The notes beneath the pieces were generated by a model. That model was not told the origin of the DNA. It worked only from the letters and a program-made list of their open reading frames with translations, and searched no databases. A stretch of 64,000 nucleotides of DNA, taken from contig CDRNVI010000044.1 of the NCBI GenBank assembly GCA_977017575.1, forward strand, positions 926,759 through 990,758, in the 5' to 3' direction. The position numbers and the translations under genes were made by a program. The stretch is from Paramoeba atlantica. Taxonomy: Eukaryota > Protista > Discosea. Positions 11,234 to 64,000 of the stretch are shown here, in pieces (position 1 is the first letter of the stretch; each line of letters opens with the position of its first letter).

Positions 11234-13315
11234 TTATGTTTTAATCTCCAAATCGTCAGAAGCCTTTTGCGGCTTACTGGCAATGAACGGCTGAAGCTTG
11301 CGTAATGATTTCTTCCACTGTCGAAGATTCAAGTTGTAGGTTGGTTTTTCAACCAAAGTATTTTCTGGATCCGGCCTCTGTGGTATCTCATGAACGAGTT
11401 TGAAGAGTTCTTGCTCTTCCGTTTCATCGTTGACATCTCGAAGATAAGAATGCTGAAAAGGAGGCTTAGGATGATTCATGACATGTAACCACACGACGTA
11501 AGCTTTTGAACGCATCACGGGCGTAAGAGCTTTCTTGCGAGAGCAAACCAATGCGTCTTGTTCACTTAAAGACCCCTCTTTCGAATTCATCATGGCTGTA
11601 CTCGAGTCTCCGACTGAGACATCCTTTGAATTTGTGTAAGCAGGGTCGGGAGACGTGTTTTCTGATGCGAAACTTTCATCTTTGAGCGTCATCGCATGAG
11701 CTTTCTTTTGCTGGAGCGTCAGATTCGTCTTTTCTTTCTTCTTCAGCGAGCGAGGAGTGGGTTTCTGCTTCTCATCTGTTTTCCTTGTGATTCGTGTCGC
11801 TGTTTCCTTCGTTATCTTTTTCACAGAGGTACTGCTTTTCTTTGTCCTTTGATCCGCATAACAGAACCGGCCGTTGTCGTACTTCAACGCGAATTTCAAA
11901 ATGTCCTGCGTGTCTTCCATATCCTCAAGATAGGGCGCATATCGTCGAGGGTAGTGATACATTGTCATCGGATTCACCCACGGCACATACCCAATCTCAT
12001 TCGCCCACGGGTCATACATATACGCCCCACGCGCAAACCTCGAAACATCCTCCCCCACACAACTCGCAGGATCGCTCTCCCGTCCCTCCACCGCACCTTT
12101 CCCCTTCTTTCCCTTCCCCTTTCCCTTTTTTCCTTTTTTCTCCTCCCTCCCCTCTAACCCCCCTCCTTCCCCTGTCTTGATCTCGTTTCCCACCCCCTGC
12201 CCCGTTTTTCCTTCCCCTCCCCCCGGACCCTCCCCCTCCCCCTCCCCGACCGCATACGGCACCGGCACCACCACGGGGGCGTACCGCGGCCCGCACCCCC
12301 AGGCCGCGCGCCACCCCGTCCCGCACGCACGCTCCAGCACGCGGTACGCCGCAGCCGTCAGCCACCGGTTCCCCCCGACGTGGCCGTGCGGGAAGGAGAC
12401 CCCGGGAAGGAGAGGGGCGCCGGGCATGCGGGGAGTAGCCGTCGTAGTGGTTGCTGCTGCTGCTGCTGCTGCTGTTGTCGTAGTAGTAGTAGTAGTAGTT
12501 GTTGTTGTGGTTGTGGCTACTGGAGAGAGCTGGGAGAGCTGGGAGAGCTGGGTGTGTAGGGCTGTACTGTAGGTAGGGGTGTGGGAGGTAGGGAGTGAGG
12601 GGGGGAGGTGTGGGGGGTAGTCGTGAGGGGGGAGAGGGTGCAGTTGTTGCTGTTGTTGTTGTTGTTGTTGTTGCTGTGAGGTTAGGCGTTTCTGTTGAGT
12701 TTGTTGGGGTTGCGGTTGTTGCTGTTGTTGTGGTTGATGTTGTGCGGGGGGTTTGTTGTACAGCGTGGGGGGGTGGGTAGGGAGAGAGGTAGAGGAGGGG
12801 GGAGGGGGGGGACGGGGGGTGGTAGTGCCACTGGGATGGGATGGGGGCGTAGAGGTAATAACGGGGACAGGTCCGGATGGGGTACGCACTGTGGCGTGGG
12901 TACGGATCTTTTCTCGGAGTTGTTGAAGCTGGTGTCGTTCGTCGGTGCTGATGAGGGTGTCGGTGCGGCGGATCGTTGAGGAGGGGTGGGAGGAAGGGGG
13001 GAGGAAGGGGGAGGTGAATTCGGCGGGGTATTTTTCGGTGGTTTTCCGTGTCGTGGTGTGGAGAATTTTGTGTGTTGAGAGGATGTGCTCGGGAATGGTG
13101 GGGGTTTGGTCGTGAACGGTGTCAAGGTGAGACCGTGGGGGGATGACGTGGGATCGAGTCTCCACGCGGGATGGGCGATCCGGGCGAGTGAAACCGCTAG
13201 AGAGGAAGGACGGGGAGGTTCCGCTTTGGAGGTCAAGTAGTGACCGTACGCGCAGACGAATACGTTGGAGCTCGTCGTAGGAGTACTTGATGCGAGGAAC
13301 TGTGGCGATTGACAT
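11234..13315 (-). CDS. Low-complexity P/Q/T/G-rich protein with N-terminal eIF4E-binding-like motif (4E-IP-like)
   Basis: 693-aa ORF; N-terminus RIKYSYDELQRIR; poly-Q, poly-T, poly-A and Gly/Glu/Lys tracts. Confidence 0.55.
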   Translation of the reverse strand: MSIATVPRIKYSYDELQRIRLRVRSLLDLQSGTSPSFLSSGFTRPDRPSRVETRSHVIPPRSHLDTVHDQTPTIPEHILSTHKILHTTTRKTTEKYPAEFTSPFLPPSSHPSSTIRRTDTLISTDERHQLQQLREKIRTHATVRTPSGPVPVITSTPPSHPSGTTTPRPPPPPSSTSLPTHPPTLYNKPPAQHQPQQQQQPQPQQTQQKRLTSQQQQQQQQQQQLHPLPPHDYPPHLPPSLPTSHTPTYSTALHTQLSQLSQLSPVATTTTTTTTTTTTTTAAAAAAATTTTATPRMPGAPLLPGVSFPHGHVGGNRWLTAAAYRVLERACGTGWRAAWGCGPRYAPVVVPVPYAVGEGEGEGPGGGEGKTGQGVGNEIKTGEGGGLEGREEKKGKKGKGKGKKGKGAVEGRESDPASCVGEDVSRFARGAYMYDPWANEIGYVPWVNPMTMYHYPRRYAPYLEDMEDTQDILKFALKYDNGRFCYADQRTKKSSTSVKKITKETATRITRKTDEKQKPTPRSLKKKEKTNLTLQQKKAHAMTLKDESFASENTSPDPAYTNSKDVSVGDSSTAMMNSKEGSLSEQDALVCSRKKALTPVMRSKAYVVWLHVMNHPKPPFQHSYLRDVNDETEEQELFKLVHEIPQRPDPENTLVEKPTYNLNLRQWKKSLRKLQPFIASKPQKASDDLEIKT
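12453..12745. repeat. Coding microsatellites (GCT)n, (TAG)n, (GTT)n and (GAGAGCTGG)x3
   Basis: Directly visible; they encode poly-Ala, poly-Thr, poly-Gln and SQL repeats on the minus strand. Confidence 0.9.
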
Positions 13316-13506
13316 AGCGAGGAGAATATGTAAAAAAGAGTATAAATCAAACTAGATGCAGGTAAACTTGATGAGGATATTGTAATGACCATATCGTGTT
13401 GATTCATCTTGCGACTTTACGAGTATCAATTGTTTTGTCTATATAGGGGGGTCACAGTTTAGGGGGGTCACAGTATATGCTAGGAAGATGATTCTGAAAA
13501 CGGGAA

Positions 13507-14007
13507 CTACTGCACATGCGGTGGTACAGCTTCGAATGTGTGTGGGTATCGGGGATAATAATGGTAATATTTGTGTCGAGTGGCATTGTATCCCGCCCAA
13601 CGATCAGCAATACGACGTATTTCTTTTTGGCCAGCAGGATCCTCACTGTGCAGAGAGGCGGCGATATCTTCGGACTCCGGCATCGGGCCTGGTTGTCCAG
13701 GTGCAACTAACGTCGCCCGTCGCATGTCGTCCACTTCAAGAGGATTGACAATTCTTGTGTATGGTTCGTAGTCAGAATCTTCGGGATGATTGAGCGTGTA
13801 CTCTGCTCGTACTTCCGGCTCCACACTCTTTAGTACATAGTACGGACGTCGTAGTGTCGCCTCATTGGCTTCTGCAGCGTCTCGCTTAAACCATTCGTAC
13901 TTTCGGACACTATTGGGGAGCGGATGTAGAAGATGACGCCACTTTGTGTGAATGCGCCGCAGAAATCTGCAACGGTTGATCATAATACAGAAAAAGCTTA
14001 GCAACAA
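13507..14007 (-). CDS. Hypothetical protein, possibly mitochondrial
   Basis: 166-aa ORF on the cluster strand, Arg-rich N-terminus (RCRFLRRIH), normal composition. Confidence 0.6.
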   Translation of the reverse strand: MLLSFFCIMINRCRFLRRIHTKWRHLLHPLPNSVRKYEWFKRDAAEANEATLRRPYYVLKSVEPEVRAEYTLNHPEDSDYEPYTRIVNPLEVDDMRRATLVAPGQPGPMPESEDIAASLHSEDPAGQKEIRRIADRWAGYNATRHKYYHYYPRYPHTFEAVPPHVQ

Positions 14008-14213
14008 TAACTCTACTTCTAAGTTCTGTGTGTTTTGCTATACAAAATGGAAAACTTCATAAAACGTGGTTTTTACTGCAGGCTTTTGAACACAAAACTG
14101 GTAAATATTGGTATTTAAGGTCTTAAAAGGTTTTAATCTTGACTTGAACTTTTCATCAAATATCCGTGTGAACGAGCCCCAGTACACTAAATATCAACTT
14201 CACCATTGATACA

Positions 14214-17174: not shown

Positions 17175-17684
17175 GAAAAATCGCAGTAATACTTTTCCTA
17201 TTTAGCATGAAATCTTTGCGTAGTATTGTTGGATGCTCGTATTTAAAGTAATCGGGCTGATTCCTTAGAAGTCTTAAAATAGCTCTTAAAACAGGAACTT
17301 CAAAACCCGTTTATGAGGCACCGTTTTACGATTACTTATTCATAAGCACGCTATACAACTGCGTTGTAGTGTTCTCTTATTATACGTAGCTGTAACCCTC
17401 TATTTTCGTCTGCATACAAGTACAAGTTTATAAAATTATAAAATGCACGTGGGTTGCTCCAGTAGGACTATATTACACGTGAGCCTCGATCATCTCGAGA
17501 TGTATTTTTTTCACATAATTGAGAGAAACACAAAAGAATACATAGTGTTCCTCATAATCACATATTTGATTTGCATAAAACCCCTTCCGAATCAATAGTA
17601 AAATTCAGGCATGCTTCTGCAGTCCTAGGAACTTTCCGCAGTCCAAAATTTTCACGTAGTTTGATCTGAATTTAAGATCTGCAA

Positions 17685-18998: not shown

Positions 18999-19153
18999 GA
19001 TGATACAACAATGTAAGAACCAATATAAGAACGTAGAAAATTCTAAAAAGACTGTGTGTGAATCTTATCTTAGATTAAAAGACTTACAGGTACATCAGCA
19101 AGACAATAAAACACAGTACTATTCTTTCCGAAGATTAGTTTTTCTCGCTTTTT

Positions 19154-21009: not shown

Positions 21010-23262
21010 CTACGCACTCTTGTACGCCCGCAGCACGTTCAATGCCTCTGAGAGTTTACTTTGTAAGATGTTAGGATCCTCCAGGACATTCAAAATCTCG
21101 GTCGTGTCCATTTCTAACAGCATCCCTGTGATTTTCGCAGCCTGCTCCGGCTCTTGCGACTCAATTCGAGCATACAATCGCTCGCCTAACGCATTTTTCT
21201 GTTCCTCTTCGCTCATCGCCGCGAGCGCGGAGGACGTCAACGGTGGTAGTCCCTGAAACCCGGGAATGCTTTTCACGGGGGGTGGGGGCGTCACACTGGG
21301 TTGTGCCGGCGCCTGTGGACCACTCCCATACGCCGAAGTCGGCATCCCCTGTACCCCGGGTCGCTGGGGCACCGCCGGAGCCATCGCAGGCATCTTCGGC
21401 CGCATCAAATGCGGTTGTGGCCCTGCCACCCCACCTGCGGGCGGGAGCATTCCTGCTGGAACGCCTCCAGCCCCTACCGGGGGAACTCCTACCCCTCGTC
21501 CCCCTCCTTGCATCATCATCCCTGCCTGGGAGAATGGATGAGGTCGGGGATTCACCAAATTCGGATTCACGCCCAGATGGGGATTTCCCGGGGGGTGCAT
21601 TCCCATCCCGGGCATCGCACTCGGAGGCACCCGGGGAGGGTAACCATAGGGCATACGAGCCGGGGCCATTCCCATGGGGTTCGCCCCGGTTGCGGGGGTT
21701 CCCCCGGGTACGGCTACGCCCCCTGGGGCTCCCATTCCCCGGCCGGGGACCATACCTCCTCGTGGGGGATACCCTCCCGGTCCCCCGACGCCTCCCCCTC
21801 TCCCCATTGCACTCATTACGGCTGGATACGGACTGCCACCATAGTAACTCGGGGAGGCGGTGCCGTAGGGTCCAGCCAATGGAGGGATCCCAGAGGGGGG
21901 AAGCCCGGGGTGGGCCGAGGCCGTGGGGTAGGCATGAGGGAGCGGCCATCGTGGGTGGCCAGGGGCCCCGGGGTACGTGGGTAGTGCGGTAGGCAGCCCC
22001 GCGGTGCTGGCCCCCCCGGTCGCCTGGGTCTCACGGTACCGACGACGTTGTTGGAGGTTAAGGAAGGGGGTAACGAGGAGGGGTTTGCCAGCGACCAGTT
22101 TGCCGTTCAGGACGGAGATTGCACGGTCGGCGTCCTCACGGGATTTGAATCGGACAAAGCCGTAGCCTTTGGAGAGCCCGGTGGTGGTGTCCTGCATCAC
22201 GACGGCACTGCTGACCTCGCCGATTTTGGAGAAAAGTTCAGTGAGTTTTTCGGTGGTGAAGCCATCGGGGATATTTTTGACGTAGACATTGCCTTCGAGG
22301 AATTCCGCCCCCTTGCCGTCTTCTGTGGCAGCGTACTGAACGGCTTTCATACGTTCCGCACTTTTCATAGCACGACCGGCAAACAAGGTGAGGTCACCGC
22401 CGATTTCTTCAATGACTTTGTCGTTGAGTTCCTCAACGCACTTGAGAGCCTCCTCGTGGGATTCAAAGCTCGCAAAGCCAAACTTGGCTTTGAATTGTTT
22501 ACTCTCGGTGAGTTCAGAGACGCTGACAACTTTTCCGAATTTCGACAAATATTCCTTCAAAGCATCAGTGGTGAGATCTGGTTTGAGATTACGAAGAAAC
22601 ACGTTCGTGTAGGATCCATCCTGTTCACCGAAACGCTCTTTGGTCGATTTGAAAGGACCCACGTACAGTTCAAGGTCGTTGATCTTCGCACCATTCATTT
22701 CCGCAATAGCCGTATCTGCCTCGGAATCATTTTCAAACTGCACGAATCCGTGACCCATACTTTCTCCTTTGCGGGTACGTCCGACTTTCGCGGAGGTGAT
22801 TGCACCAAACTTTGCAAAGATTTTCGCCAAACTCTTGTCGTCGACATCCTTAGTGAGATTCTTAATAAAAATGTTCCCGTGTCCCGATTTCCGCTTCGTC
22901 GGGTCACGCTCGTACCACATCAGCCGCATCGGTTTAGCTCCGGGACGAATGGGGACGTAGTTCAGCGCGTTCAGCGACTTCTCTGCGTCCTCGGTGCAGG
23001 AAAAATTCACGTAGCCATACCCCAGGGAGGCCTGTGTGTTAAGGTCCCGACACACCCGCACGGAGGTCACCGGGCTGTGCTTGGAGAAGAACGCAAACAA
23101 GGCGGGCTCGCTGATCTCCGGGGTGATGTTGCCGACATAGAGTGTGGCGGAGGTGGTGGGTTCCGTGCCAAGGGGCACACCTTCGGGGGTGGGATGGGAC
23201 ATGTCCGCTGGGATGGGAATCTCCGGGACGGGCGCGGTCTCAGTTGCTGGATTAGCGGACAT
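21010..23262 (-). CDS. PABP: Polyadenylate-binding protein
   Basis: Four RRMs (LYVGNI/LGYGYVNF, IFIKNL/GHGFVQF, VFLRNL/FGFASF, VYVKNI/KGYGFVRF), Pro/Gly/Met linker, C-terminal MLLE domain (KNALGERLY...KITGMLLE). Confidence 0.96.
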   Translation of the reverse strand: MSANPATETAPVPEIPIPADMSHPTPEGVPLGTEPTTSATLYVGNITPEISEPALFAFFSKHSPVTSVRVCRDLNTQASLGYGYVNFSCTEDAEKSLNALNYVPIRPGAKPMRLMWYERDPTKRKSGHGNIFIKNLTKDVDDKSLAKIFAKFGAITSAKVGRTRKGESMGHGFVQFENDSEADTAIAEMNGAKINDLELYVGPFKSTKERFGEQDGSYTNVFLRNLKPDLTTDALKEYLSKFGKVVSVSELTESKQFKAKFGFASFESHEEALKCVEELNDKVIEEIGGDLTLFAGRAMKSAERMKAVQYAATEDGKGAEFLEGNVYVKNIPDGFTTEKLTELFSKIGEVSSAVVMQDTTTGLSKGYGFVRFKSREDADRAISVLNGKLVAGKPLLVTPFLNLQQRRRYRETQATGGASTAGLPTALPTYPGAPGHPRWPLPHAYPTASAHPGLPPSGIPPLAGPYGTASPSYYGGSPYPAVMSAMGRGGGVGGPGGYPPRGGMVPGRGMGAPGGVAVPGGTPATGANPMGMAPARMPYGYPPRVPPSAMPGMGMHPPGNPHLGVNPNLVNPRPHPFSQAGMMMQGGGRGVGVPPVGAGGVPAGMLPPAGGVAGPQPHLMRPKMPAMAPAVPQRPGVQGMPTSAYGSGPQAPAQPSVTPPPPVKSIPGFQGLPPLTSSALAAMSEEEQKNALGERLYARIESQEPEQAAKITGMLLEMDTTEILNVLEDPNILQSKLSEALNVLRAYKSA

Positions 23263-23672
23263 TCAGAAACAGTAAACCACTAGGAAGGAAAAAGTGTGTT
23301 AAGGAAGGAAATGGTTGGATAATTCTGTCAAGGCGAAGAGAAAGAATACACGGTCAGCTTGTCAACTTTTCTTTGAAGTACACAATATCATTTACACAAA
23401 GTACAATGTGATAGAAAACTAAAAAATGCAATGGTTTAGTAGCCAAAAATGCAAGTGAATAGTTGCAAAAAATTGCAATTGAAGCCCAATGCACAAATGC
23501 CGTGTGTATCAGTTGAAGCAAATCAGCCTTTTTGAAGCTGATCGGTAGCATCCGCTACGATTTCATAGCTGGAACTCAGCTATGATAGATATGATACGTA
23601 CGGCAGGGAATGATCGTCGTATCATTTCCCTAGGACTCACGCACAGCTCCCAGGTTAAGTAAAAAAGTGGCG

Positions 23673-32203: not shown

Positions 32204-32496
32204 GTAAGCAAGCGCTATCCTGTCTTCAGTGTCAGCGTAACGGCATGTCGGTTTTTCTTGTAAGATATTTATGAGCGGTAGGACATGAGTGGAAGATAGA
32301 AGCTATAATAATTTTCTTAAGCGTTACGTTGAGCGAGTAAACGTGAGATCCGAAACTCTTTTCCCTTTGATACTTGGTTACTAGTGGTACTGTTGTCAAA
32401 TCTTCATTCATCCCTTTAACTAAAAGATCAACCGATTTTAGGAAAACCAAAACTAATCACACAACCCATCTCATTTACCCACGCGCATACACCCGC

Positions 32497-33102
32497 TCAC
32501 ACCGTCGACCGCACCTCCAAAAACCGCTTCAAATAGCGCATCTGAAACAGCCCCATCCCCACCAGCACCGCCGCCTCAAAAAGCGACCAATACAGCAAAT
32601 ACTCCGCCGTCTCCTCCACCGTGTCCCGGTGCAGCCTCTCCGTGACCCTTAACGCTCGCTGCTCCTCCTCGAGCTCCGCTAGATCCTCATTCAACGTCAT
32701 CACAGCACGCTCCACGGGGTCCACATCCGAGGCTTTCGCAATATGGGGGTTGTGTCCCCTGTGGACATAAAAACTCATCCACTTCGGGGTCCATTTGGAG
32801 TGTTCATTGGAGAAACACAGCGCGACCAAGCGATCGGTTTTGGGGCGATCCGACCACTTCCCCTCGGGCTCCGCGTTCCACTGCTGGATCACCACCCCGG
32901 AGTGCCCCTCCTCGACGGTCACCACCACATCCAGCTGTCCCCCCGCGACCGCCTGGAACTGGAAGGAGGTGTGGGTGTTGGAGGGGATCTGCTCCAAGTA
33001 GCACTCCTTGGTGCGGGGCTCAATGCGTGTGGTGAGGCAGTGGGTGGGGGGGAGGAGCGAGAGGAGGAGGAGGAGGAGGGGGAGGGGGAAGGGAGGGGGC
33101 AT
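32497..33102 (-). CDS. p24/emp24/gp25L (GOLD domain) cargo receptor
   Basis: Signal peptide, IEPRTKECYLE, GGQLDV, LCFSNEHSKWTPK, coiled coil, TM (WSLFEAAVLVGMGLFQMRYLKRFLE). Confidence 0.92.
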   Translation of the reverse strand: MPPPFPLPLLLLLLSLLPPTHCLTTRIEPRTKECYLEQIPSNTHTSFQFQAVAGGQLDVVVTVEEGHSGVVIQQWNAEPEGKWSDRPKTDRLVALCFSNEHSKWTPKWMSFYVHRGHNPHIAKASDVDPVERAVMTLNEDLAELEEEQRALRVTERLHRDTVEETAEYLLYWSLFEAAVLVGMGLFQMRYLKRFLEVRSTV

Positions 33103-33190
33103 GGGAGGGGAGGGGAGGGAAGGGTGAAGAGAGGGGGGAAGGTGGGTGTTGGGTGGGAAAGATGAAAAAGGAAAGAAAAGAAAGAGGTAA
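33103..33190 (-). promoter_or_regulatory. Polypyrimidine tract upstream of the p24 ATG (probable trans-splicing signal)
   Basis: Plus strand is almost pure G/A with a few T, so the sense strand is C/T-rich. Similar tracts precede the genes starting at 43367, 54272 and 57103-57166. Confidence 0.5.
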
Positions 33191-33956
33191 AAAGGGGCGT
33201 TTCTACACAGCTGGAAAATCGAGTACGTCTAAGGGCAAAATATTTTTCTTTTAACCTCCTTTTTTTATTTATTAATTAATTAATTAAATGCACTAAACAA
33301 GAAAAATTGTGAGCTTTATCCCCGTTTCGGTTCTGAGCTCGGAAAAAGATTTCAAATTCCTTCAACATTGGATTACAAGAGGTCTTTAATTGCATCATAC
33401 AGCACAGTCTTCTATCACTGTGTCATCCAAGGTTCCCAACTACAGGATTCGCATACGATTTGATGCGGTTAGACATCTTGAAGCCTATGCGAAGAAAAAT
33501 GATAGAACGGAGTCGTGTAAGTAAATACGATGCTTAATCACTCGCTTAGATAATACAAAAAATTTTGTTGCGAAACTAATGCAAAATTGAGAAAGTAATT
33601 TCGAGCACGTCTAGACATTGGGTGACTAAACTTTATACACACAAGTACACAGTACAATACGATGTGCTAAATCTAGTACGGACTTCTCTTTTCGTACCAG
33701 GATAGTAAACACCGGAGTTTTTCAACGTTGGCAACTGGCTCACATGTTTAAGAAGACGACATGTCGAAGGATTTGATTTAGCGATCGCGTCTCAGGTTGT
33801 TCTCCTAAATGAGCGTTGAGTGAAACACGCTCTGTATTTGAATGACATGGGCGACGCGTATGGCCACATCACCCATGGCACTCTTGTTTCCTTGCGTCAC
33901 AGGCTCCGCCAACTTCTCACCAACAATGGATATTCGTATTCGATGCAAAAGAGAAA

Positions 33957-34959: not shown

Positions 34960-35027
34960 TTACGCCCAAACTTAATTAAGGCCAAAATCTGGCTTTGGGC
35001 TTAATTTTAAGTTAAGTTTGGGCGTAA
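34960..35027. repeat. Nested inverted repeat (cruciform-capable)
   Basis: Perfect 16-bp arms TTACGCCCAAACTTAA (34960-75) / TTAAGTTTGGGCGTAA (35012-27), with an inner AATTAAG..CCAAA / TTTGG..CTTAATT stem. Confidence 0.9.
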
Positions 35028-38274: not shown

Positions 38275-40581
38275 CTAAATAACTTTCTCCTTACTCTCCA
38301 GAACGATTTCTTGCACTCGAGTATTTTCCACGAAAACAACGCCGTGTTTCTTCTCCAAATTTTGTTGCAGTTTCTTCCTTTCCAGCGTCTTGGGCTCGTT
38401 CTCCTTTCGAATTTCATTGATCCACTTGGTAAACTTTTCCATCACGGCGGCTTCCTTGCTCCGTGCCTCCTCTTGGTCCAGCAATCGTCGTCGCTCCTCC
38501 GTGGCTTCATATCGAGCTACGTACTCATCGATGTGGTCCCGAATCTCCTTCAACCGGCCCATACCGAGTTGCGTTGGGGGACGAGGACGCCACAGAAAGT
38601 GCGAAAACTTCTCCAAGTCCTGATGCATCAGCAACTGACCTAGAAAGTTGTAAATACGGAACCCATTGTCCAACTCCGTGTGATGTACGGAGACCGATGT
38701 CAGAAAATACCGCCCGGAGTTATCCCACATGGCATCTGTACAACTAAAATGTTCCTGGACCTGTAGCACCGTGACATTGTCATTTTCTACCTTCAAAAAC
38801 TCCAACATCCCGTTCGCATTCTTCGCCACAGCATGACTTCCCAACGGTGACCACAACACCTCCGAGGTCTCCGTGTCCTCCCTCAGTGCCATCACCCGGG
38901 CCCGGCCCTCCGAGAGTCGATAAAACCCTTGGCGGTGCTTCGTCTTCTTCTCCCCTTTCTTCATAGTGCTGGTCACACAAAACCGGGCCCCCTCTCGCCC
39001 TTCGGGGTCCCACACCACCTCCATCACATTCCCCTCGACCTCGATTTGCTCAATATCAACTTTACGCCCGTGGACACAGTACAGGTCGATTTTATCCCGT
39101 CGTTGGGTACCGACACGACGCATGAGAACCGCACAGTAGGCACGATCACTGCTACTCCCCGTACTCCCCCCCGTACCCCCATAACGACATGAGCTCCTCG
39201 GTTGCCACTTCATGCTCACCTCCTTGACCTCATACACCGTTCGGTTGGATAACTCCTGGATTTGACTCCCCGCTTTAATCTGCTGCACAAACACTTTGGT
39301 CATTTGATCCCCCCCGGGGCGCGAGGCCGCGCTGACGACACTGTAGAGCAGCACGGAGGCGACCGGCGCCCAGGCAAAACACAGCGTGGCCTCTTTTTCG
39401 ATTTTATGAATCGAGACCGGGGAAAGCTCGCTCATCGCACAAAGATACAGACTCGCCTTGGTGCGCTGCACAAAGAAGTCCTCCGAGGCGTTCCAATGGA
39501 AGAGCGGCCAGGAAGCTTCATTGTGGCTGCTGTTACTGCTGCTGTTTTCCTTTTTACTCATCTTATGCTCACTCTCACTCTTGTCTTCGCTCTTTTTCGG
39601 CTCTACACTCTGCAATGGGTGGGGCCCGAGCGCTGTGGCAAAGGTCCGTAGCTTTCTTCCTTTTTCAATATCCCACAGTGTGGTGCATTTCGTACACGCC
39701 GTGAGGGCATACCGCTCGCTGGGGGTGACATAGGCACGACGGAGCTTGGGGTGGTTGAGCCGAAGCACGAGCTCCCAGGGGGGGGTGGGGGTCTTACTAC
39801 TGCCTTGGTCCATCGCGTTCGTCCCGTGTTCGTTGTTGGGGTCCCGAAACGACCAGAAACCTAAATAGGAGGGGTGCAGCGTGAGGACGTAGGAACCCAG
39901 GGGGGACCACATGGGGTAGGCGGGCTGGACACGGCGGGCGGAACGGTCGAATGCGGTCCACTCCGCGGGGGAGGGGGGGAGGGGGGGGCCGCGGGTGGAG
40001 GCCTCGGTGGGGTTGGGGGGCGGTCCCATGATGGGGACGGTTTTCACCACCATGTGGGGATCATGCCAGCCCCAGAGGATGTCGTACCCAGGACCGGATT
40101 TCAGGAGGAACTGCTCCCGGCCATTGGGGTCACGGAGGAAGGTGTAGGGGAGGTCATAGGCGACGGGGGGCTCGGTGTCGGGGAGATTGGTGTCGAGGTT
40201 TCTTTCAACATTCTCGGGGGTTTCGTTGAGGTACGTGTCAAAGTCACCCCACTCATTGGCAATCAGTCGGCGCGTCTTGTCCATAGGGAGGTCGTTGAGT
40301 TGGGAGACTGCTTTTTGTGCCTCAGCGCGGGAGCTGCACTCGACAAACATGTAGCCCAGGGAGGCGTGGGTGAGTTCGTCTCGCATGAGGTCGGCACGTT
40401 TCGGAAAGACACCGTGGTCGTTCATGAGTTTGGTGATCACACGTAGAAAGTTGGGTACCATCCCGCCAACGACTTTGGGGAGCCCGTCAAGGACAAAGCA
40501 GTTAGACATGTCACGGAGGCTGCCAAGGGAGTCCGTCTTCGTCTCCGACTGGTACTGTTTGAAATCCGCTGAAACAGACAT
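38275..40581 (-). CDS. eIF3b: Translation initiation factor eIF3 subunit b
   Basis: N-terminal RRM (FVLDGLP...LGYMFVEC...LNDLPMDKTRRL), beta-propeller (WSPLGSY, WSPLGSH, WDNSGRYFLTSVS...DNGFRIYNFLG...FLWRPRPP), C-terminal helix. Confidence 0.92.
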   Translation of the reverse strand: MSVSADFKQYQSETKTDSLGSLRDMSNCFVLDGLPKVVGGMVPNFLRVITKLMNDHGVFPKRADLMRDELTHASLGYMFVECSSRAEAQKAVSQLNDLPMDKTRRLIANEWGDFDTYLNETPENVERNLDTNLPDTEPPVAYDLPYTFLRDPNGREQFLLKSGPGYDILWGWHDPHMVVKTVPIMGPPPNPTEASTRGPPLPPSPAEWTAFDRSARRVQPAYPMWSPLGSYVLTLHPSYLGFWSFRDPNNEHGTNAMDQGSSKTPTPPWELVLRLNHPKLRRAYVTPSERYALTACTKCTTLWDIEKGRKLRTFATALGPHPLQSVEPKKSEDKSESEHKMSKKENSSSNSSHNEASWPLFHWNASEDFFVQRTKASLYLCAMSELSPVSIHKIEKEATLCFAWAPVASVLLYSVVSAASRPGGDQMTKVFVQQIKAGSQIQELSNRTVYEVKEVSMKWQPRSSCRYGGTGGSTGSSSDRAYCAVLMRRVGTQRRDKIDLYCVHGRKVDIEQIEVEGNVMEVVWDPEGREGARFCVTSTMKKGEKKTKHRQGFYRLSEGRARVMALREDTETSEVLWSPLGSHAVAKNANGMLEFLKVENDNVTVLQVQEHFSCTDAMWDNSGRYFLTSVSVHHTELDNGFRIYNFLGQLLMHQDLEKFSHFLWRPRPPTQLGMGRLKEIRDHIDEYVARYEATEERRRLLDQEEARSKEAAVMEKFTKWINEIRKENEPKTLERKKLQQNLEKKHGVVFVENTRVQEIVLESKEKVI

Positions 40582-40806
40582 TAAAGAATTTTGCGAAGTT
40601 GTGGATCAATTCCTAGAAATTCTTGATTACAGTAGTTCTGGTTGATATTGTTCGATAAGCGTAGCTTTGGAGATGCATCAAAACACTTTCTGCATTCTGT
40701 ATGATGAAAAGGTGTTGTAAAATACGATGTTTCAAAAGCATTAAAGCAAAATACCGAACTTATTTAAACCAGGAGAAACAAACATCCTTGTGATTCTTTC
40801 AAAAGA

Positions 40807-42452: not shown

Positions 42453-43562
42453 TTATCCTTTTCTCAACAAACTTGTGGATTGCGCCCACTTGACCACCGC
42501 ACCTTTCACCCGCGCTACCCCTTCCATCCGTGACACGATCTCTGGTCCGTACCCCTCCCACTCCATCACACTCTCCTCGCACGTCCCCACATGGTGCTGA
42601 GGGACATGCAGGGAACGGGAACACACCCGAGGGTAGGCCGACCCGTCCCAGGGACCATACACCGCCACGTCCTCGGCAACGACCAGAACCGGCCACGTAA
42701 TCTCCGGTGCCGGAGATGGCCCACTCTTGTTCTCTTTTATGTCTTCCTTGATTTCCTCCCCTCCTTTCCTCCTCCCCGTTTCCCTCTCACAATGCTCCCG
42801 GTGGGATTGTAGAATTAACGCCACATCCCTTTCATCCCCCCAACGTGTGTCACCGTACTGCCGTGCGAGTGTCGTGAACAACTCGTAGGGGGCAATGGGA
42901 TATTCACAACCGTTCAAACCCTTCGAAGGTGGTTCCTTCGAACTTAACGTTTTAGGGTTTAACGTTCGATCGTTTAACCCTTTTACGGCGTTACGCGTTT
43001 CCCCTCCCCCGGGGGGGAGCGCTCGACCGGTGGTCACGCGCTCCAGCCGGGCACGAAGCTGGTCGTAGTCCGGGGAGGGGAGCGGCTGCTCCGCGCTGGC
43101 GCAGAAGTACCGCTGTCGCACCACCGCGTGGGCGGTGTTGGTGGATTTCTCCTCGACGCGGATCTCACGCACCGCGGCGGCGTGGAACACTGTCGTGGTG
43201 CCGTCGGAGGGCTGGATGACCACCGCGAGCTGGGCGTCGTGGTCCACGGCGAAGAGCAGCCCCTGGAGGGTGTCGTGCGGGCCAGGGGCGGGGGACTCGG
43301 GGGTGGGGGGTCGATGGAGGTGAACGGTAACGAAGCGACCGATGTGGGTGTTTTGGAGTTGTTGCATTGGGTTTGGGGGGTGGGAAAATAGGGGGAGAAG
43401 AGGAAAAAGAGATGTGGTGGAGGAAAGTGGTAACGTAGGGTGGATGAAGGGGGATAGAGGAGGTGAAATACAGGGTGAGGATGGAGTCATTGGGGTGGAA
43501 TAGGGAAGGCTAACCAGTATTTTTAAAGGGATGCTACAACCATTTACAACTTGTAAAAGCAA
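42453..43562 (-). CDS. LSM12-like protein (Lsm N-terminal plus anticodon-binding-like domain); true start probably ATG 43367
   Basis: IGRFVTVHL...LQGLLFAVD; YELFTTLARQYGDTRW...LVVAEDVAVYGPW...VARVKGAV follows the LSM12/AD-domain layout. The upstream in-frame part is a pyrimidine tract. Confidence 0.62.
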   Translation of the reverse strand: MLLQVVNGCSIPLKILVSLPYSTPMTPSSPCISPPLSPFIHPTLPLSSTTSLFPLLPLFSHPPNPMQQLQNTHIGRFVTVHLHRPPTPESPAPGPHDTLQGLLFAVDHDAQLAVVIQPSDGTTTVFHAAAVREIRVEEKSTNTAHAVVRQRYFCASAEQPLPSPDYDQLRARLERVTTGRALPPGGGETRNAVKGLNDRTLNPKTLSSKEPPSKGLNGCEYPIAPYELFTTLARQYGDTRWGDERDVALILQSHREHCERETGRRKGGEEIKEDIKENKSGPSPAPEITWPVLVVAEDVAVYGPWDGSAYPRVCSRSLHVPQHHVGTCEESVMEWEGYGPEIVSRMEGVARVKGAVVKWAQSTSLLRKG

Positions 43563-45509: not shown

Positions 45510-45561
45510 TCTTATAAGTCTATGCATAAGCCATTTAATGGCCTCTCGGCAAATATATATC

Positions 45562-53488: not shown

Positions 53489-53687
53489 TCTGAATATGTC
53501 TTGGAAGGAAACAAAATAATAATTAAAATATTAGCTATCAAAAAAACAAAATTGCTAAGAATACATAATCCAAATTGTCAAAACAAATACCCACCATTTT
53601 CCAATTTATTACGCTAAAACCCATCACCCCTTAGTTTATATGCTATCACCCCATAGGCTATCACTACCCGTCCCCCTCCCTTATTCC

Positions 53688-54272
53688 CTATTTCCCCCGC
53701 CACACCACCCACCCCCTATACACCGACACCACCACCCCCACCCCTGCCATCACCATCGTACCCACCACCGCTACCTTCGCAAACACCCAATTCCGGGACC
53801 TGCACCGTGCCTGCACGGAGGTCGTGTCCCGGTACAGAGGCATCTGTCCCCGTACCCTACGTTCGAACCCATTCACCAGGGTACAGATGTTGGGTAACTC
53901 CCCGGTAATACGGGGAGTGGGACTACTCGTATTATTCGTAGTACTTGTCGTATTACGACGCGTATGACTCTTTCGAGTCGTATTACTCTTCCTCTCCCCC
54001 TCCCCCTCCCCCCACATTCGGTACAGCGGTGTGAAGTGCTGGAGTTCCCGCTCCATGAGTCCCACACAGGCGTGGTGGGTACAGAGCGAGCAGTGGGTCA
54101 CGGGGAACGACCCCACGGGGGAGCAGTCCCCGAGGTAACAGCAGTGACACAGACACAGCGTGGTGGGGGGAGGGGGGCTAGGAGGAGTAGTAGTGTTAGC
54201 ACTACAGAGCAGAGGGGTGGGGGAGAGGATAAGGAGATAGAGGAGATAGGGAGGGAAGCGAGGGGGTGGCAT
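53688..54272 (-). CDS. Small secreted or type-I membrane Cys-rich protein
   Basis: Signal-like YLLYLLILSPTPLLCSA; CLCHCCYLGDC...CSLCTHHAC...C...C; C-terminal hydrophobic helix VAVVGTMVMAGVGVVVSV. Confidence 0.6.
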   Translation of the reverse strand: MPPPRFPPYLLYLLILSPTPLLCSANTTTPPSPPPPTTLCLCHCCYLGDCSPVGSFPVTHCSLCTHHACVGLMERELQHFTPLYRMWGEGEGERKSNTTRKSHTRRNTTSTTNNTSSPTPRITGELPNICTLVNGFERRVRGQMPLYRDTTSVQARCRSRNWVFAKVAVVGTMVMAGVGVVVSVYRGWVVWRGK

Positions 54273-54591
54273 GGGGGAGGCTGGGGTGGGGGTTAAGATT
54301 GAGATGGGGGAAGGAGGGGGGGGAGGGGGAGGAGAGTGAGAGGGGGAAGAGGGGGGGATAGTGGTGGAGGGTGAGACATGAAGAGGTGAGAGAGGTAAAA
54401 AGGAAGGAAAAGGTAGAGGTTTTTTTGTGATTGAAATTAAGGAAAGGCAAAGTAGACGGGAGAAGATTTATAAGGCCCTTTAGAGGAATATGATTACCGT
54501 ATACCCCCACCTCAGTGATAGAATGGGCTTCGGGACAAAATCTCTTTTATTTGGGGGAATGCTTTTTTTGGGGGTGTTTTTCTTTATGCCC

Positions 54592-54745
54592 AGCCAACTC
54601 CGCTGCTCAGCCATCCCCATCCTCCCAACCACCCTCAGCTCGACCAGCCATCCTCACCTGTCCAGCCACCCCCGCCCACTCAGCCTCCTCAGCCAGCCAG
54701 CCTCCCGAGCCAAATCCCTGTTACTGGGGGGGGGGGGGGGGGGGG
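54592..54745. repeat. CAGCC/GGCTG-rich segment followed by a G20 homopolymer
   Basis: About 8 CAGCC copies in 54592-54705; G run 54726-54745. Confidence 0.85.
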
Positions 54746-54829: not shown

Positions 54830-55093
54830 CTACCCATGAGAAGTGATGAGAAGAACTCCGTCGCCTCTAAGCCATAGTAAATCTTTTCGAGCTGTCTCAA
54901 TGGTTGGTTCTTTAGTGTGATTGCTTGCAGCACCATGTGTCTCATCAGGTAGAGTGTAAGAGATTTCCTCTCCTTCCTTTAACAACAAATTAAAGTATTC
55001 ATCGAAGGCAACCAGGGTCCCAGTAACTTGCTGATCGCCTTTCAGGTAGGCAGTAATGCGCTTGCGAAGTGACGAAAGAAGTAACTCGGTCAT
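54830..55093 (-). CDS. Sm-like protein, closest in pattern to LSm3
   Basis: Sm1 ITAYLKGDQQVTGTLVAFDEYFNLLLKEGEE; Sm2 LWLRGDGVLLI. Confidence 0.82.
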   Translation of the reverse strand: MTELLLSSLRKRITAYLKGDQQVTGTLVAFDEYFNLLLKEGEEISYTLPDETHGAASNHTKEPTIETARKDLLWLRGDGVLLITSHG

Positions 55094-55996: not shown

Positions 55997-57166
55997 TCAC
56001 GTATAGGTAACGTAAATAACTATTCGAGGAGGGAATTCATATTCGCTTAATCGTATAGTAGAGTCCTTTGGAAGCTTTTTTATAGGATGTGATTGAACAG
56101 ATAAAGCAAGGCTTGCTTTATTGCCAGGCAAGGCGCCCTGCGCGACGGGTATCGGGTATTCGGCTAAATACTGTTCCACAAAATCATACACCGCGTCCGT
56201 TGTGTCCACGACTCGAAACTGGCGCATTACCGTTTTCCCCGTGGGCAAAATAATTTTGGTATACAGCACTTCCTCTCCTTCTGTCTCAACTCCTGTCTCC
56301 ACTTTCATGCTCTCAGTTCCGGAGGCTGATATCCCACACGTTGTGAGAACCTCAGGCACATATGCAGGGGTCTCTGGCACACAAGCAGGGGTACTCATTA
56401 CAGTCCTACCAACGCCCGCAACCTCCTCCGTTTCACCGACTTTTCCCCCAACCTCCACTTCCTCCCCTTTTTCCTCCCCCTCCCCACCCCCCCTTCCCCT
56501 CCCCGCATCCCTCCCCCAGGCCACTTCATATTCCCCCTGCTGGGTCTTTCGCAACCCCACCCGGCTCACCCCCTCCCCTCTCCTGGACGCCAGCGTCTCC
56601 CCCACCCCACGGTGCCTCTCCCCCACCACCCGACGCAGCTGGTCGACCACAGCCTCGGGGGGGAGTAGACGCCCGTGTTGTTCTCCTTCTTCTCCTTCCA
56701 CTCCTCCTTCCACTCCTCCTTCCACTCCTCCTTCTACTCTTCCCTCTACTCTCCGTTCTACTCCTCCTTCTACTCCTCTCTCTTCCCCTCCCTCCCCTGC
56801 ACTATACTGCATACGACAGATCAGTTGATCATGGCCGTGGATGCGGACCAGTACAGCGTAGAGCGGGGCCGAGACCCCGTGGAGGGCATGGAAGGCCGCG
56901 AGACCCTCGGGGGTGTGGAGGGGTCGTTGCCACAGTACAAAGTGGTGGTGGAGGAAGGAGCAGGAGGAGGGTGAGAGGGAGGGGAGGGGGGAGGCAGAGC
57001 AGGAGAAGGAGGGGGTAATGCAAACCAGGAGGAATTTGTGTTGGCGTGAGCTCTCGGCGAGGGCATCACGGTAGGAAAGAGGTTGTGGGGGGGAGGGGGG
57101 CATGGGGAGGAGTGGAGGGGTGGAGAGGGAGTGAGATGGCGGGGAAGGATAAAAAGACGAGCGCAA
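55997..57166 (-). CDS. UBX-domain protein (FAF1/UBXN-like, UAS plus UBX)
   Basis: N-terminal YRDALAES...KFLLVCI...FLHHHFVLWQ (UAS-like); C-terminal TKIILPTGKTVMRQFRVVDTTDAVYDFV...PIKKL...LSEYEFPPRIVIYV (UBX). Confidence 0.75.
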   Translation of the reverse strand: MRSSFYPSPPSHSLSTPPLLPMPPSPPQPLSYRDALAESSRQHKFLLVCITPSFSCSASPLPSLSPSSCSFLHHHFVLWQRPLHTPEGLAAFHALHGVSAPLYAVLVRIHGHDQLICRMQYSAGEGGEERGVEGGVERRVEGRVEGGVEGGVEGGVEGEEGEQHGRLLPPEAVVDQLRRVVGERHRGVGETLASRRGEGVSRVGLRKTQQGEYEVAWGRDAGRGRGGGEGEEKGEEVEVGGKVGETEEVAGVGRTVMSTPACVPETPAYVPEVLTTCGISASGTESMKVETGVETEGEEVLYTKIILPTGKTVMRQFRVVDTTDAVYDFVEQYLAEYPIPVAQGALPGNKASLALSVQSHPIKKLPKDSTIRLSEYEFPPRIVIYVTYT

Positions 57167-57434
57167 GGGGTTGACGGTGTTTGTAAATTAAGGTAGGGAT
57201 CAGTACAATGAAACCAATACAGGTAGGAAACCTGAAAAGACACTCATCGAAGTCCTTGTTTAGATGAAATGCATTGCTTTTTTTAGAGGAATGCATTGCT
57301 TTTTTTTGTCTACGTTTTTCCTGTGGGGGGTCATCTCTCCACCTTGGCGGACATTACGCGGATCTTGCCATAATGTCTCTGGATCTTGCACTAAAGGATA
57401 AAGATGCAGTTTCTGTGCCTTATTGGTACATTTT

Positions 57435-60013: not shown

Positions 60014-60088
60014 GTTCATTGAACATACCGTACGTGGCGAAATATTGAGGTTCGACCTGTTTGTAGGGGGTGTCCGGGGTGCGCCTGC

Positions 60089-62866: not shown

Positions 62867-63028
62867 TTCAAAATAAAAGGATTATAAAAATGGAAAGAAT
62901 ACCCGAACGCTTCTATAAAGAAAATAAAATGCAGCAAACAAGTAGTTCAACAGTAGTGATTGTATTCTAACCATGATTACAAGTGACACAACATACACCA
63001 CAACATACCCCCATTGGTCATTACCATG

Positions 63029-64000
63029 TTAGATATCTTTAAACGCATCTTTCACACACTGAAAGACGCGCAACGGTACGCCTCGAAAACCAAACTCTTC
63101 CACCAAAGCATTCCGTATCATATTTTCGTATCTTGGGGGCAATTTTTTCCTATCATTCCGTGTTTGTAGGTGTAACAAAAACGTCGGGGGTCGTATATTG
63201 ATTTGCTGTAGCCTACGCACCCGCGTCACGTGATGCGGCATGCTCACCGTTTTCTCCAAGCGCTGCCAAAATCGCGTCAACACGGACGCCGGAATGTGTC
63301 GATTCCACGTCTCATACGCCCGAATCACACTATCCAACAACAGATCCAAATTCAACCCCGTCACCCCAGACACCGCCACGGCATTACAATACTTCACCTC
63401 ATACAGCTGTCTGCGTAGCTTATAATCAATCGCCTCCGCGGTCGCGATCCCATCCTCTACCGTATCCCACTTATTGGCCGCATACACCACCGCCCGCCCC
63501 TCATCCACGCATCGGTACCCAAGAATGAGATCCGCCTTGCTGGGGCACCCCTTGCTGGCATCAAACACCACCACCACGACACTGGCAAACCGCAGCGCCG
63601 ATCGGGTCCGTTTCCACAGTGCCTCCCGAAACGGCCGATCGCGCAGCTCTCGTATGCGCACAAACCCCGCAGTGTCAATCAGCTTCATCCGCGTCCCTTT
63701 GTACACGCAACGTACCTCTAACGTATCCCGTGTGGTCCCCGGCACCTTGGAGACCCGAGCCCGTGGGTGTGCAAACACTCGAGGAGCTTGTTGTGTTCCT
63801 GGGTTACCTTGTGAGAGTCCTCCTCCACGACCTTGTTCAGAGCATCGTTCGGGGGGATCTAACTTCCTTTTCTCCTCCCCCCCTCCCCTCCGTCCTTCCT
63901 CTCCCCCTCCCCCCCTTTCCTCTTCTCCCCCTCCCCTCCCTTCTCCCCAAGATTCCACATGCTCCCCCCCATCTACTTCCCCTCCCCCTCCATCCCCTCC
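63029..64000 (-). CDS. der: EngA/Der-family GTPase, C-terminal part (second G domain plus KH-like domain); 5' end beyond the window
   Basis: VSKVPGTTRD (G2), LIDTAG (G3), ANKWD (G4), PPTFLL...YENMIRNALVEEFGFRGVPLR; frame stays open from 63958 to 64000. Confidence 0.85.
   Translation of the reverse strand, partial: GGDGGGGEVDGGEHVESWGEGRGGGEEERGGGGEEGRRGGGEEKRKLDPPERCSEQGRGGGLSQGNPGTQQAPRVFAHPRARVSKVPGTTRDTLEVRCVYKGTRMKLIDTAGFVRIRELRDRPFREALWKRTRSALRFASVVVVVFDASKGCPSKADLILGYRCVDEGRAVVYAANKWDTVEDGIATAEAIDYKLRRQLYEVKYCNAVAVSGVTGLNLDLLLDSVIRAYETWNRHIPASVLTRFWQRLEKTVSMPHHVTRVRRLQQINIRPPTFLLHLQTRNDRKKLPPRYENMIRNALVEEFGFRGVPLRVFQCVKDAFKDI

What the first reader, a model, noticed from the sequence alone, without database searches (positions are those of the whole stretch)
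11990..64000. Recurrent bipolar GC-skew islands (C-rich then G-rich on both strands) cutting through genes
Seen: about 8 GC-rich islands of roughly 1-2 kb interrupt otherwise ordinary, more AT-rich DNA, at about 12.0-13.3, 21.2-23.3, 32.5-33.2, 38.8-40.5, 42.5-43.5, 53.6-54.4, 56.4-57.2 and 63.2->64 kb. In most, the plus strand is C-rich on the left and G-rich on the right, so either strand reads C-rich then G-rich 5'->3'; PABP is less clear-cut, and only the C-rich half of the last island is in view. The host proteins follow the DNA: Pro/Ser/Thr/Leu runs first (PSPPSHSLSTPP, TPPSPPPPTT), then Gly/Glu/Arg runs (VEGGVEGG, GEGEGEGPGGG, GGGEEERGGGG), in unrelated families (UBX, p24, LSM12, eIF3b, EngA, PABP). 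Established: a negative-to-positive skew switch is the signature of bidirectional strand-asymmetric processes. Inference: these are fixed chromosomal sites (replication origins, internal bidirectional Pol II initiation/R-loop sites, or recombination hotspots) strong enough to rewrite coding sequence. I know of no description of this in kinetoplastids.
Basis: partly seen in the sequence, partly recalled or inferred. Interest (0 to 1): 0.85.

Follow-up and report, generated by a model that had tools for sequence, protein, structure and literature searches.

The report
Skew-flip GC islands inside kinetoplastid genes
In this kinetoplastid gene cluster about one gene in three carries a 1-2 kb GC-rich stretch in which even silent codon positions switch sharply from C-rich to G-rich; this is the footprint of a DNA-level process working outward from a fixed point in the gene, and I found no description of it in this group.

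Summary
Nine GC-rich islands (GC 0.56-0.64 against 0.46) all run C-rich to G-rich.

- **Not an artefact.** A second haplotig and RNA contigs from two studies carry the islands.
- **Not driven by amino acids.** Fourfold sites go from C .21/G .22 in ordinary genes to C .56 in 5' arms and G .50 in 3' arms.
- **Strand-specific.** Only one of the two complementary transitions rises in each arm, so classical GC-biased gene conversion fails. The two arms are mirror images.
- **Shape.** Skew peaks 250-600 nt from a sharp switch and fades by about 1 kb.
- **G4 motifs.** All 27 lie in islands, on the strand running away from the switch.

Three corrections:
- "C then G on both strands" is an arithmetical identity.
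- Islands sit in register with genes and never straddle an intergenic region.
- Two relatives lack them.

**Best reading (0.35):** self-reinforcing divergent R-loop/initiation zones. The exposed non-template strand turns to G through abasic-site bypass.

**Rivals:** break-repair hotspots, RNA-level selection, replication origins. The origin reading is weakened because T. brucei origins show the opposite G4 polarity.

Other first readers noted the same islands elsewhere in this genome; those notes are unchecked. I found no published description.

The parts
11950..13320 (.). Island 1. Switch at about 12376. The sense (minus-strand) C arm is 12377-13320, starting at the ATG of gene 11234-13315. 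The G arm is 11950-12376 and ends in mid-gene.
   Evidence: Fourfold skew is -0.68 then +0.80.
21010..22600 (.). PABP island. Switch at about 21850. RRM3-4 uses C-ending codons and the MLLE domain uses G-ending codons. A weak GC3-rich stretch at 22900-23320 has little skew.
32400..33200 (.). p24/GOLD gene island. A sharp switch at 32953 lies inside the conserved domain. The C arm runs through about 100 nt upstream of the ATG, and the G arm about 60-100 nt past the stop.
38300..40560 (.). eIF3b island. Switch at about 39610. The C-type codon bias appears to resume beyond the AT-rich intergenic gap, in the 3' end of the upstream gene (40807-41050).
40622..40622 (-). Spliced-leader acceptor site of the eIF3b mRNA. 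The poly(A) site is near 38100.
   Evidence: Loose ends of RNA contigs carry the spliced-leader 3' end.
42480..43520 (.). Island 5, in a gene of unknown family. Switch at 43010, where a C run abuts a G run. The spliced-leader acceptor is at 43411, and the C-rich polypyrimidine tract upstream of it belongs to the island.
53600..54420 (.). Island 6, around the small ORF 53688-54272. Switch at about 54019-54068. Both arms spill about 100-150 nt into non-coding flanks (G 0.01 upstream, C 0.06 downstream on the sense strand).
54580..54745 (.). Non-coding mini unit. On the sense strand a run of 19 C is followed by about 150 nt of G-rich sequence.
56300..57200 (.). Island 7, in the 5' two thirds of gene 55997-57166. 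Switch at 56814. A weak UBX-like C-terminus lies outside the island.
63200..64000 (.). Partial island in the EngA-like GTPase gene. Only the sense G arm is in view.

Best explanation
**Shown.** Each island is a domain in which A:T pairs have been replaced by G:C pairs in a strand-specific, mirror-symmetric way around a sharp switch point. G has accumulated at the expense of T, A and slightly C on the strand that runs 5'->3' away from the switch. This holds at silent sites, in UTRs and, where the protein tolerates it, in amino acids (Pro/Ser/Thr then Gly/Glu/Arg). It is therefore a DNA-level substitution bias, not codon or protein selection.

**Inferred.**
- The G-gaining strand is the one that is repeatedly single-stranded.
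- Lost or excised bases on it are bypassed by inserting C opposite the abasic site (Rev1-type bypass). Any base then becomes G, largely whatever its neighbours are.
- Divergent transcription with R-loops exposes exactly these strands on both sides of a point. The non-template strand is displaced in each direction, as at CpG-island promoters and trypanosome GT/G-rich start regions.
- G-rich non-template DNA favours R-loops and G4s. From my own knowledge, R-loops can themselves seed antisense initiation. The system would then feed back on itself, giving all-or-none islands with extreme skew.
- Islands survive only inside genes because a G arm laid over a polypyrimidine/splice-acceptor region would abolish trans-splicing.

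**Confidence.** About 0.65 that this is a centre-out DNA-level strand-asymmetric process. About 0.35 that divergent initiation with R-loops is the generator.
For: - **Silent sites.** Fourfold sites are A .29 C .21 G .22 T .29 in ordinary genes, C .56 G .16 in 5' arms and G .50 C .20 in 3' arms.
- **One transition per arm.** In twofold codons the NNY C-share is .75 in 5' arms against a base of .42, while the NNR G-share stays at .46. In 3' arms the values are .40 and .66.
- **Mirror symmetry.** The complement of the 5' arm is not distinguishable from the 3' arm (p = 0.06). The A/T asymmetry flips between arms (Fisher p = 5e-5). Neighbour effects mirror each other too: the share of the enriched base is .36 against .33 in a GpC context and .43 against .44 in a CpG context.
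- **Distance profile.** Skew peaks 250-600 nt from the switch and returns to baseline by about 1 kb.
- **Non-coding arms.** They reach G .01 or C .06.
- **G4 motifs.** All 27 lie on the outward-running strands.
- **No intrinsic PTU skew.** Ordinary genes of the same transcription unit show no skew at all, so plain read-through transcription is not enough.
- **Yeast precedent.** Transcription-dependent T>G and A>C changes arise through uracil, abasic site and Rev1 C-insertion. T>G on the non-transcribed strand is further raised when R-loops accumulate (PMC6063437).
- **Lineage-specific.** eIF3b of Perkinsela and of a metagenomic kinetoplastid has no island.
- **RNA depth.** RNA contig depth is 1.6-fold higher downstream of the eIF3b switch. 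This is weak, because 3' bias is an alternative.
Against: - There is no direct evidence of initiation or antisense RNA at the switch points. The RNA data are unstranded contigs.
- Known kinetoplastid start regions lie between or at the heads of polycistronic units and are several kb wide (own knowledge). They are not inside coding sequences every 5-10 kb.
- Arms often stop abruptly at gene ends, even next to apparently unconstrained DNA, for example at 33200. The model explains this only by selection.
- CpG observed/expected is not raised.
- SNP density in islands (5.8/kb) equals that of other coding DNA (6.1/kb). No present-day hypermutation is visible, though numbers are small.
- Whether this organism has Rev1-type bypass was not tested.
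Confidence: 0.35

Rival explanations
1. **Recurrent DNA breaks with strand-asymmetric repair.** These would be recombination or fragile-site hotspots. Resection and error-prone fill-in around a fixed break point would rewrite about 1 kb on each side.
For: - The length scale of 0.3-1 kb per arm and the off-centre peak of the effect resemble resection tracts and the off-centre mutation peaks at human hotspots (PMC7615360).
- C-run/G-run junctions at the switch could be fragile.
- Strand asymmetry that flips at the break is documented.
Against: - In the human data the single-stranded 3' tail loses C and A, and so gains G. For a break at the switch this gives G-rich then C-rich, the opposite of what is seen.
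- Placing breaks at the island edges repairs the polarity, but then mirror arms should appear in the neighbouring genes. They do not.
- Classical GC-biased conversion is excluded by the one-transition-per-arm result.
- Heterozygosity is not raised.
Confidence: 0.2
2. **Selection on the RNA.** The (pre-)mRNA of these genes would be selected to be C-rich in its 5' part and G-rich in its 3' part, for protein binding, RNA G4s, long-range pairing or less local structure.
For: - Islands are in register with genes. The C arm is always at the 5' end, and both arms usually lie within one mRNA.
- UTRs are included.
- Only the sense-strand base rises in each arm.
- C/G segregation lowers local folding in eIF3b (z = 3.9) and slightly in p24.
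Against: - Mirror symmetry of composition and of neighbour effects between arms has no reason under RNA selection.
- The C-rich tract upstream of the splice acceptor at 43411 is not in the mature mRNA.
- The eIF3b C arm seems to resume in the upstream gene.
- The arms are not complementary beyond G-C content. They are C/T against G/T in island 1 and C/A against G/A in p24.
- Island mRNAs are still more structured than ordinary ones, and island 6 shows no structure gain.
- There is no sign of higher expression. The island-5 gene has about the same RNA depth as its non-island neighbour, and islands 6 and 7 were absent from the 2015 transcriptome.
Confidence: 0.15
3. **Replication origins at the switch points.** The lagging-strand template, which is the outward-running parental strand, is transiently single-stranded and gains G.
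For: - The polarity (minus to plus skew on the + strand) is that of bacterial origins and of human skew jumps (own knowledge).
- The same abasic-site logic would work on the exposed lagging-strand template.
- G4-rich elements accompany origins in many eukaryotes.
Against: - The skew is confined to about 1 kb per side instead of persisting to the next terminus.
- The GC rise is not predicted.
- Origins mapped by stranded nascent-strand sequencing in T. brucei are intergenic. [quoted passage not shown] That is the opposite orientation to these islands (PMC13179062).
- Eight origins in 52 kb would be very dense.
Confidence: 0.1
4. **Ordinary causes.** These would be expression-linked GC3 codon bias plus low-complexity protein segments, or an assembly artefact.
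For: - Some well-expressed genes (PPDK 5' half, cytochrome c1, PABP 5' end) have raised GC3 without a flip. A separate codon-usage effect therefore exists.
- Low-complexity runs are abundant in islands 1, 6 and 7.
Against: - The preferred ending flips within conserved domains.
- The bias continues in UTRs and in a non-coding mini unit.
- Islands are present in a second haplotig and in RNA contigs of two studies.
Confidence: 0.03

Closest known systems
Mammalian CpG-island bidirectional promoters with GC skew and R-loops (own knowledge: Ginno et al. 2012/2013; Polak & Arndt 2008)
   Same: - A GC-rich block of about 1-2 kb.
- Skew flips at a point, so that the non-template strand is G-rich in both directions.
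- Skew peaks a few hundred nt from the point and fades by about 1 kb.
- G4 motifs lie on the non-template strand.
   Different: - These islands lie inside coding sequences of a unidirectional polycistronic cluster.
- The skew is several-fold stronger, up to 0.9.
- It arises from W>G gain rather than C loss.
- CpG is not enriched.
- Initiation at the centre is not shown.
Trypanosome Pol II start regions with G runs / GT-rich promoters (own knowledge: Siegel et al. 2009; Wedel et al. 2017) and R-loops at start regions (PMC6294496 and 10.1101/541300, listed but not read)
   Same: - The phylum is the same.
- The G/T-rich strand follows the direction of transcription, so divergent start regions read C-rich then G-rich.
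   Different: - Those regions lie between or at the heads of gene clusters and span several kb.
- They are not reported to recode genes.
- Chromatin marks cannot be tested here.
Replication-origin skew switches (bacterial oriC, human skew jumps) and T. brucei origins mapped by stranded nascent-strand sequencing (PMC13179062)
   Same: There is a sharp sign change of strand composition at a point. G4 motifs are arranged strand-specifically around a centre.
   Different: - The island skew dies out within 1 kb.
- T. brucei origins are intergenic and have the opposite G4 orientation.
Strand-asymmetric mutagenesis and GC-biased conversion at meiotic hotspots (PMC7615360; GC peaks of dogs, birds and gerbils, own knowledge and PMC7403616, listed but not read)
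   Same: - The zone around a fixed point is kb in scale.
- The asymmetry flips at the centre.
- The mutation peaks are off-centre.
- GC rises locally and overrides coding constraints.
   Different: - The polarity is opposite for a central break.
- Only one of the two complementary W>S transitions is raised per arm.
- Diversity shows no excess.
GC3-rich gene class of grasses with 5'-3' gradients and slight C3/G3 skew (PMC2895627)
   Same: Genes fall into two classes by GC3, and the pattern depends on position along the gene.
   Different: The grass C3/G3 skew is about 0.05-0.1 with no sharp flip. Here fourfold-site skew runs from -0.28 to -0.93 in the 5' arm and from +0.23 to +0.80 in the 3' arm, and the bias extends into UTRs.

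Membership tests
Replication origin (skew-switch type / T. brucei origin topology) | Sign change of GC skew from minus to plus on the + strand at a point | tested here: met
Replication origin (skew-switch type / T. brucei origin topology) | Asymmetry persists over the replicon rather than a short zone | tested here: not met
   Fourfold-site bias is back to baseline by about 0.9-1.5 kb from the switch.
Replication origin (skew-switch type / T. brucei origin topology) | Intergenic, nucleosome-poor centre with G4 on the + strand upstream and on the - strand downstream (PMC13179062) | tested here: not met
   The centres lie in coding sequence. G4 motifs lie on the + strand to the right and on the - strand to the left of the centre.
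Replication origin (skew-switch type / T. brucei origin topology) | Nascent strands or ORC binding at the site | not testable with these tools
   No such data are reachable.
Bidirectional Pol II start region / CpG-island-like promoter | GC-rich block of about 1-2 kb with the non-template strand G-rich on both sides of the centre | tested here: met
   (composition only)
Bidirectional Pol II start region / CpG-island-like promoter | Transcripts start at the centre in both directions | tested here: inconclusive
   Only unstranded contigs are available. There is a contig break and a 1.6-fold depth step at the eIF3b switch, which a SNP and 3' bias can also explain.
Bidirectional Pol II start region / CpG-island-like promoter | CpG enrichment | tested here: not met
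   CpG observed/expected is 0.45-1.0 in islands against 1.03 outside. This may not be defining in an organism without CpG methylation.
Bidirectional Pol II start region / CpG-island-like promoter | Start-region chromatin (H2A.Z, acetylated histones) and R-loops | not testable with these tools
   It needs ChIP-seq and DRIP-seq.
GC-biased gene conversion hotspot | GC rise at all site classes, including non-coding | tested here: met
GC-biased gene conversion hotspot | Both W>S transitions favoured on a given strand (no strand preference) | tested here: not met
   In 5' arms the NNY C-share is .75 but the NNR G-share is .46 (base .42). In 3' arms the values are .40 and .66.
Meiotic-break strand-asymmetric mutagenesis (human hotspot type) | The single-stranded 3' tail is the strand that loses C and A, so G-rich then C-rich around the break | tested here: not met
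   Islands read C-rich then G-rich around the switch. The polarity would fit only breaks at island edges, and the mirror arms this predicts in neighbouring genes are absent.
Translational codon bias of highly expressed genes | Confined to coding sequence, with the same preferred codons along the gene | tested here: not met
   The preferred ending flips within genes. The bias continues in UTRs and in a non-coding unit.
Amino-acid-driven low complexity | Skew absent at fourfold-degenerate sites of conserved domains | tested here: not met
   In the p24 domain C is .92 before the switch and G .61 after it. eIF3b, PABP and the EngA-like gene behave likewise.

The most novel reading that the evidence does not exclude
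This kinetoplastid has evolved many gene-internal, self-reinforcing bidirectional R-loop/initiation zones. They would be CpG-island-like promoters embedded in coding sequence every 5-10 kb, and they recode the host genes. This would break the textbook picture of promoter-poor polycistronic transcription in the group. It would also show a runaway 'any base to G' mutational feedback in a nuclear genome.
Probability: 0.3. Interest if true: 0.9.

Novelty: new variant of a known kind. Interest (0 to 1): 0.75.

Why it matters
- **Size of the effect.** Strand-composition switches are the classic footprint of replication, transcription and repair. In eukaryotic nuclear genomes they are normally faint. 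Here the effect dominates silent sites (C or G up to 0.6-0.9) and pushes Pro-rich or Gly-rich segments into conserved housekeeping proteins.
- **A map of initiation points.** If the islands mark initiation zones, they would give a sequence-readable map of where transcription or replication starts in a kinetoplastid. That question has stayed open for the group.
- **A natural experiment.** It shows how far a local substitution bias can override selection on proteins.
- **A practical warning.** Gene finders split or mis-start genes in these islands. The public gene call for eIF3b started at residue 257, and p24 was called as a 67-residue fragment.

Tried and rejected
- **Hairpin or inverted-repeat element.** Only short imperfect C-rich/G-rich matches were found. 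The arms are not complementary beyond G-C content.
- **Retroposed cDNA copies.** There is no spliced-leader or poly(A) remnant at island edges. The one SL-like 20-mer is on the other strand next to a retroelement relic.
- **tRNA or known RNA genes as anchors.** None were found.
- **A property of the gene families themselves.** eIF3b in Perkinsela and in a metagenomic kinetoplastid, 22 kb of Perkinsela DNA, and PPDK of a relative show no flip.
- **Hypermutation seen as extra heterozygosity.** It is not seen. The haplotype comparison is patchy (zero SNPs over 2-19 kb) and unpolarised, so the power is low.
- **G-run slippage or selection for G4 as the driver.** G at silent sites is not more frequent next to G. 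The G4 motifs look like a by-product of composition.
- **RNA structure avoidance.** The effect is weak and inconsistent.
- **A generic flip detector with block shuffles.** It was too coarse, because island edges score as reverse flips.
- **Organism identity.** It was not resolved. The best named PPDK hit is Trypanoplasma borreli at 62%. The best eIF3b hits are Perkinsela and strain PhF-6, at about 36-43% identity.
- **Protein searches.** The first eIF3b word search was swamped by low-complexity words and gave only 3 hits. The exhaustive search gave one further relative with DNA.

Full report
**Setting.** The window is a kinetoplastid-type polycistronic cluster.
- All credible genes lie on the minus strand.
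- Pfam identifies PPDK, a POLQ-like helicase, PABP, AFG1, SAC3, p24, eIF3b, Sec1, an Sm protein and an EngA-like GTPase.
- RNA contigs end in a spliced-leader 3' end, which maps trans-splice acceptors at 40622 (eIF3b) and 43411. A poly(A) site lies near 38100.
- The organism is not identified. The best named PPDK hit is a Trypanoplasma borreli transcript at 62%. The nearest eIF3b proteins are Perkinsela and strain PhF-6, at about 36-43% identity.

**Observation.** The window averages 46.5% GC.
- At 100-nt resolution every island has a C-rich left part and a G-rich right part on the + strand, with extremes such as G60/C1.
- A 165-nt non-coding unit at 54580-54745 has the same layout.
- A segment that is C-rich then G-rich reads the same way on its reverse complement. 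The 'both strands' property is therefore automatic. The real finding is that only C-to-G islands occur and no G-to-C ones.
- All 7 complete islands show the sign change at fourfold sites.

**Not an artefact.**
- An independent haplotig (ENA ERZ24900291, ctg3866l; 98-99.8% identical) carries the islands over window 1-45 kb.
- RNA contigs from a 2023 run run through the eIF3b and island-5 islands, bounded by spliced leader and poly(A).
- A 2015 RNA run holds 86% of the sampled words of the PABP stretch.

**Not driven by amino acids or codon choice.**

| Site class | Ordinary genes | Island 5' arms | Island 3' arms |
|---|---|---|---|
| Fourfold sites | A .29 C .21 G .22 T .29 | C .56 G .16 A .11 T .17 | G .50 C .20 A .18 T .12 |
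| NNY codons, C-share | .42 | .75 | .40 |
| NNR codons, G-share | .42 | .46 | .66 |

- The fourfold differences give chi2 = 416 and 281.
- The same holds inside conserved domains. In p24, C is .92 before the switch and G .61 after it. eIF3b, PABP RRM3-4 against MLLE, and the EngA-like gene behave likewise.
- Each arm has only one of the two complementary transitions raised. That excludes strand-blind GC-biased conversion.
- Non-coding flanks inside islands are even more extreme, with sense G .01 upstream of two ATGs and C .06-.07 after two stops.
- In the eIF3b alignment the lineage-specific inserts follow the local bias. They are Pro-rich in the C arm and Gly-rich in the G arm.

**Symmetry and shape.**
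- The complement of the pooled 5' arm cannot be told from the 3' arm (p = 0.06).
- On the G-gaining strand T is more depleted than A in both arms (Fisher p = 5e-5).
- Neighbour effects mirror each other. The enriched base is rarer only next to its complement, and G is not favoured next to G.
- Against distance from the switch, fourfold C peaks at -250 to -600 nt and G at +250 to +400 nt. Both return to baseline by about 1 kb.
- The switch is often abrupt, with a G run right after it.
- All 27 G4 motifs of the window lie in islands, on the + strand in right arms and on the - strand in left arms.
- Together this describes a DNA-level process that is symmetric about a point and adds G to the strand running 5'->3' away from it.

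**Relation to genes.**
- Every C arm begins at or near a gene's 5' end, and several islands cover a whole short gene.
- None of 8 straddles an intergenic region, although about half would by chance.
- Arms commonly stop within about 100 nt of gene ends.
- In eIF3b the C-type bias seems to resume in the last 80 codons of the upstream gene, across the AT-rich gap. This suggests that intergenic signals resist the bias rather than bound the process.
- A G arm over a polypyrimidine/splice-acceptor tract would be lethal. Selection can therefore explain the register whatever the generator is.

**Lineage specificity and diversity.**
- eIF3b of Perkinsela, 22 kb around it, and eIF3b of a metagenomic kinetoplastid show no flip.
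- SNP density between haplotypes is 5.8/kb in islands and 6.1/kb in other coding DNA.

**Mechanism.**
- 'Any base to G on one strand, almost regardless of context' is what C-insertion opposite abasic sites produces on a strand that is often single-stranded.
- Yeast shows transcription-dependent T>G/A>C through uracil, abasic sites and Rev1. T>G on the non-transcribed strand rises further when R-loops accumulate (PMC6063437).
- The strands exposed here are the outward-running ones. They are the non-template strands of divergent transcription, or the lagging-strand templates of an origin. They are not the 3' tails of a central break.
- Human hotspots show the tail strand losing C and A, which is the opposite polarity (PMC7615360).
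- T. brucei origins are intergenic with the opposite G4 orientation (PMC13179062), and an origin effect should not end within 1 kb.
- I therefore favour divergent R-loop/initiation zones with positive feedback (0.35). Break-repair hotspots follow (0.2), then RNA-level selection (0.15) and origins (0.1).
- Ordinary genes of the same unit have no skew, so read-through transcription alone is insufficient.
- Nothing here shows initiation at the switch points.

**Novelty.**
- Five literature searches found no description of such islands in kinetoplastids or elsewhere.
- The nearest codon-level analogue, grass GC3-rich genes, has a C3/G3 skew of only 0.05-0.1 (PMC2895627).
- Other first readers of this scan noted the same islands in other windows of this genome. 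Those notes are unchecked.

Noticed in passing
window 57406-57425 (+): A 20-mer matches the spliced-leader 3' end deduced from RNA loose ends, with 3 mismatches. It lies on the strand opposite to the genes, about 700 nt before the retroelement relic noted at 58.1-58.8 kb. It may be the head of an SL-capped retroelement copy.
   Followed up: partly
window 2001-19000 against 19001-45465 (haplotig L002/L003): The two haplotypes are identical over about 17 kb, then differ by 3-21 SNPs/kb. This is a long loss-of-heterozygosity tract or a collapsed assembly. Divergence jumps to about 20/kb at about 33 kb, at the edge of the p24 island, in the repeat-rich stretch.
   Followed up: partly
window 35003-36428: The minisatellite stretch does not align between the two haplotypes, so the array probably differs in length or content.
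   Followed up: no
L002 6026-7564 and 11761-11964: Public gene calls are broken by the islands. eIF3b is called from residue 257 only, and p24 as a 67-residue fragment. Spurious ORFs are called on the opposite strand inside islands.
   Followed up: partly
window 8073-10847 (PPDK) and L007 17309-18091 (cytochrome c1): These genes have raised GC3 (0.6-0.8) with little or no C-to-G flip. This suggests a separate, ordinary codon-usage effect or faint/old islands.
   Followed up: partly
window 54830-55093 (-): A small Sm/LSM-domain gene (Pfam E = 4e-12) lies between islands 6 and 7. The non-coding mini C-to-G unit sits just downstream of it.
   Followed up: partly
window 38105: All four runs share a 15-letter loose end at the eIF3b 3' end: 9 letters that differ from the window, then a T run. 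It is either a poly(A) junction with a small haplotype difference or a genomic variant.
   Followed up: no
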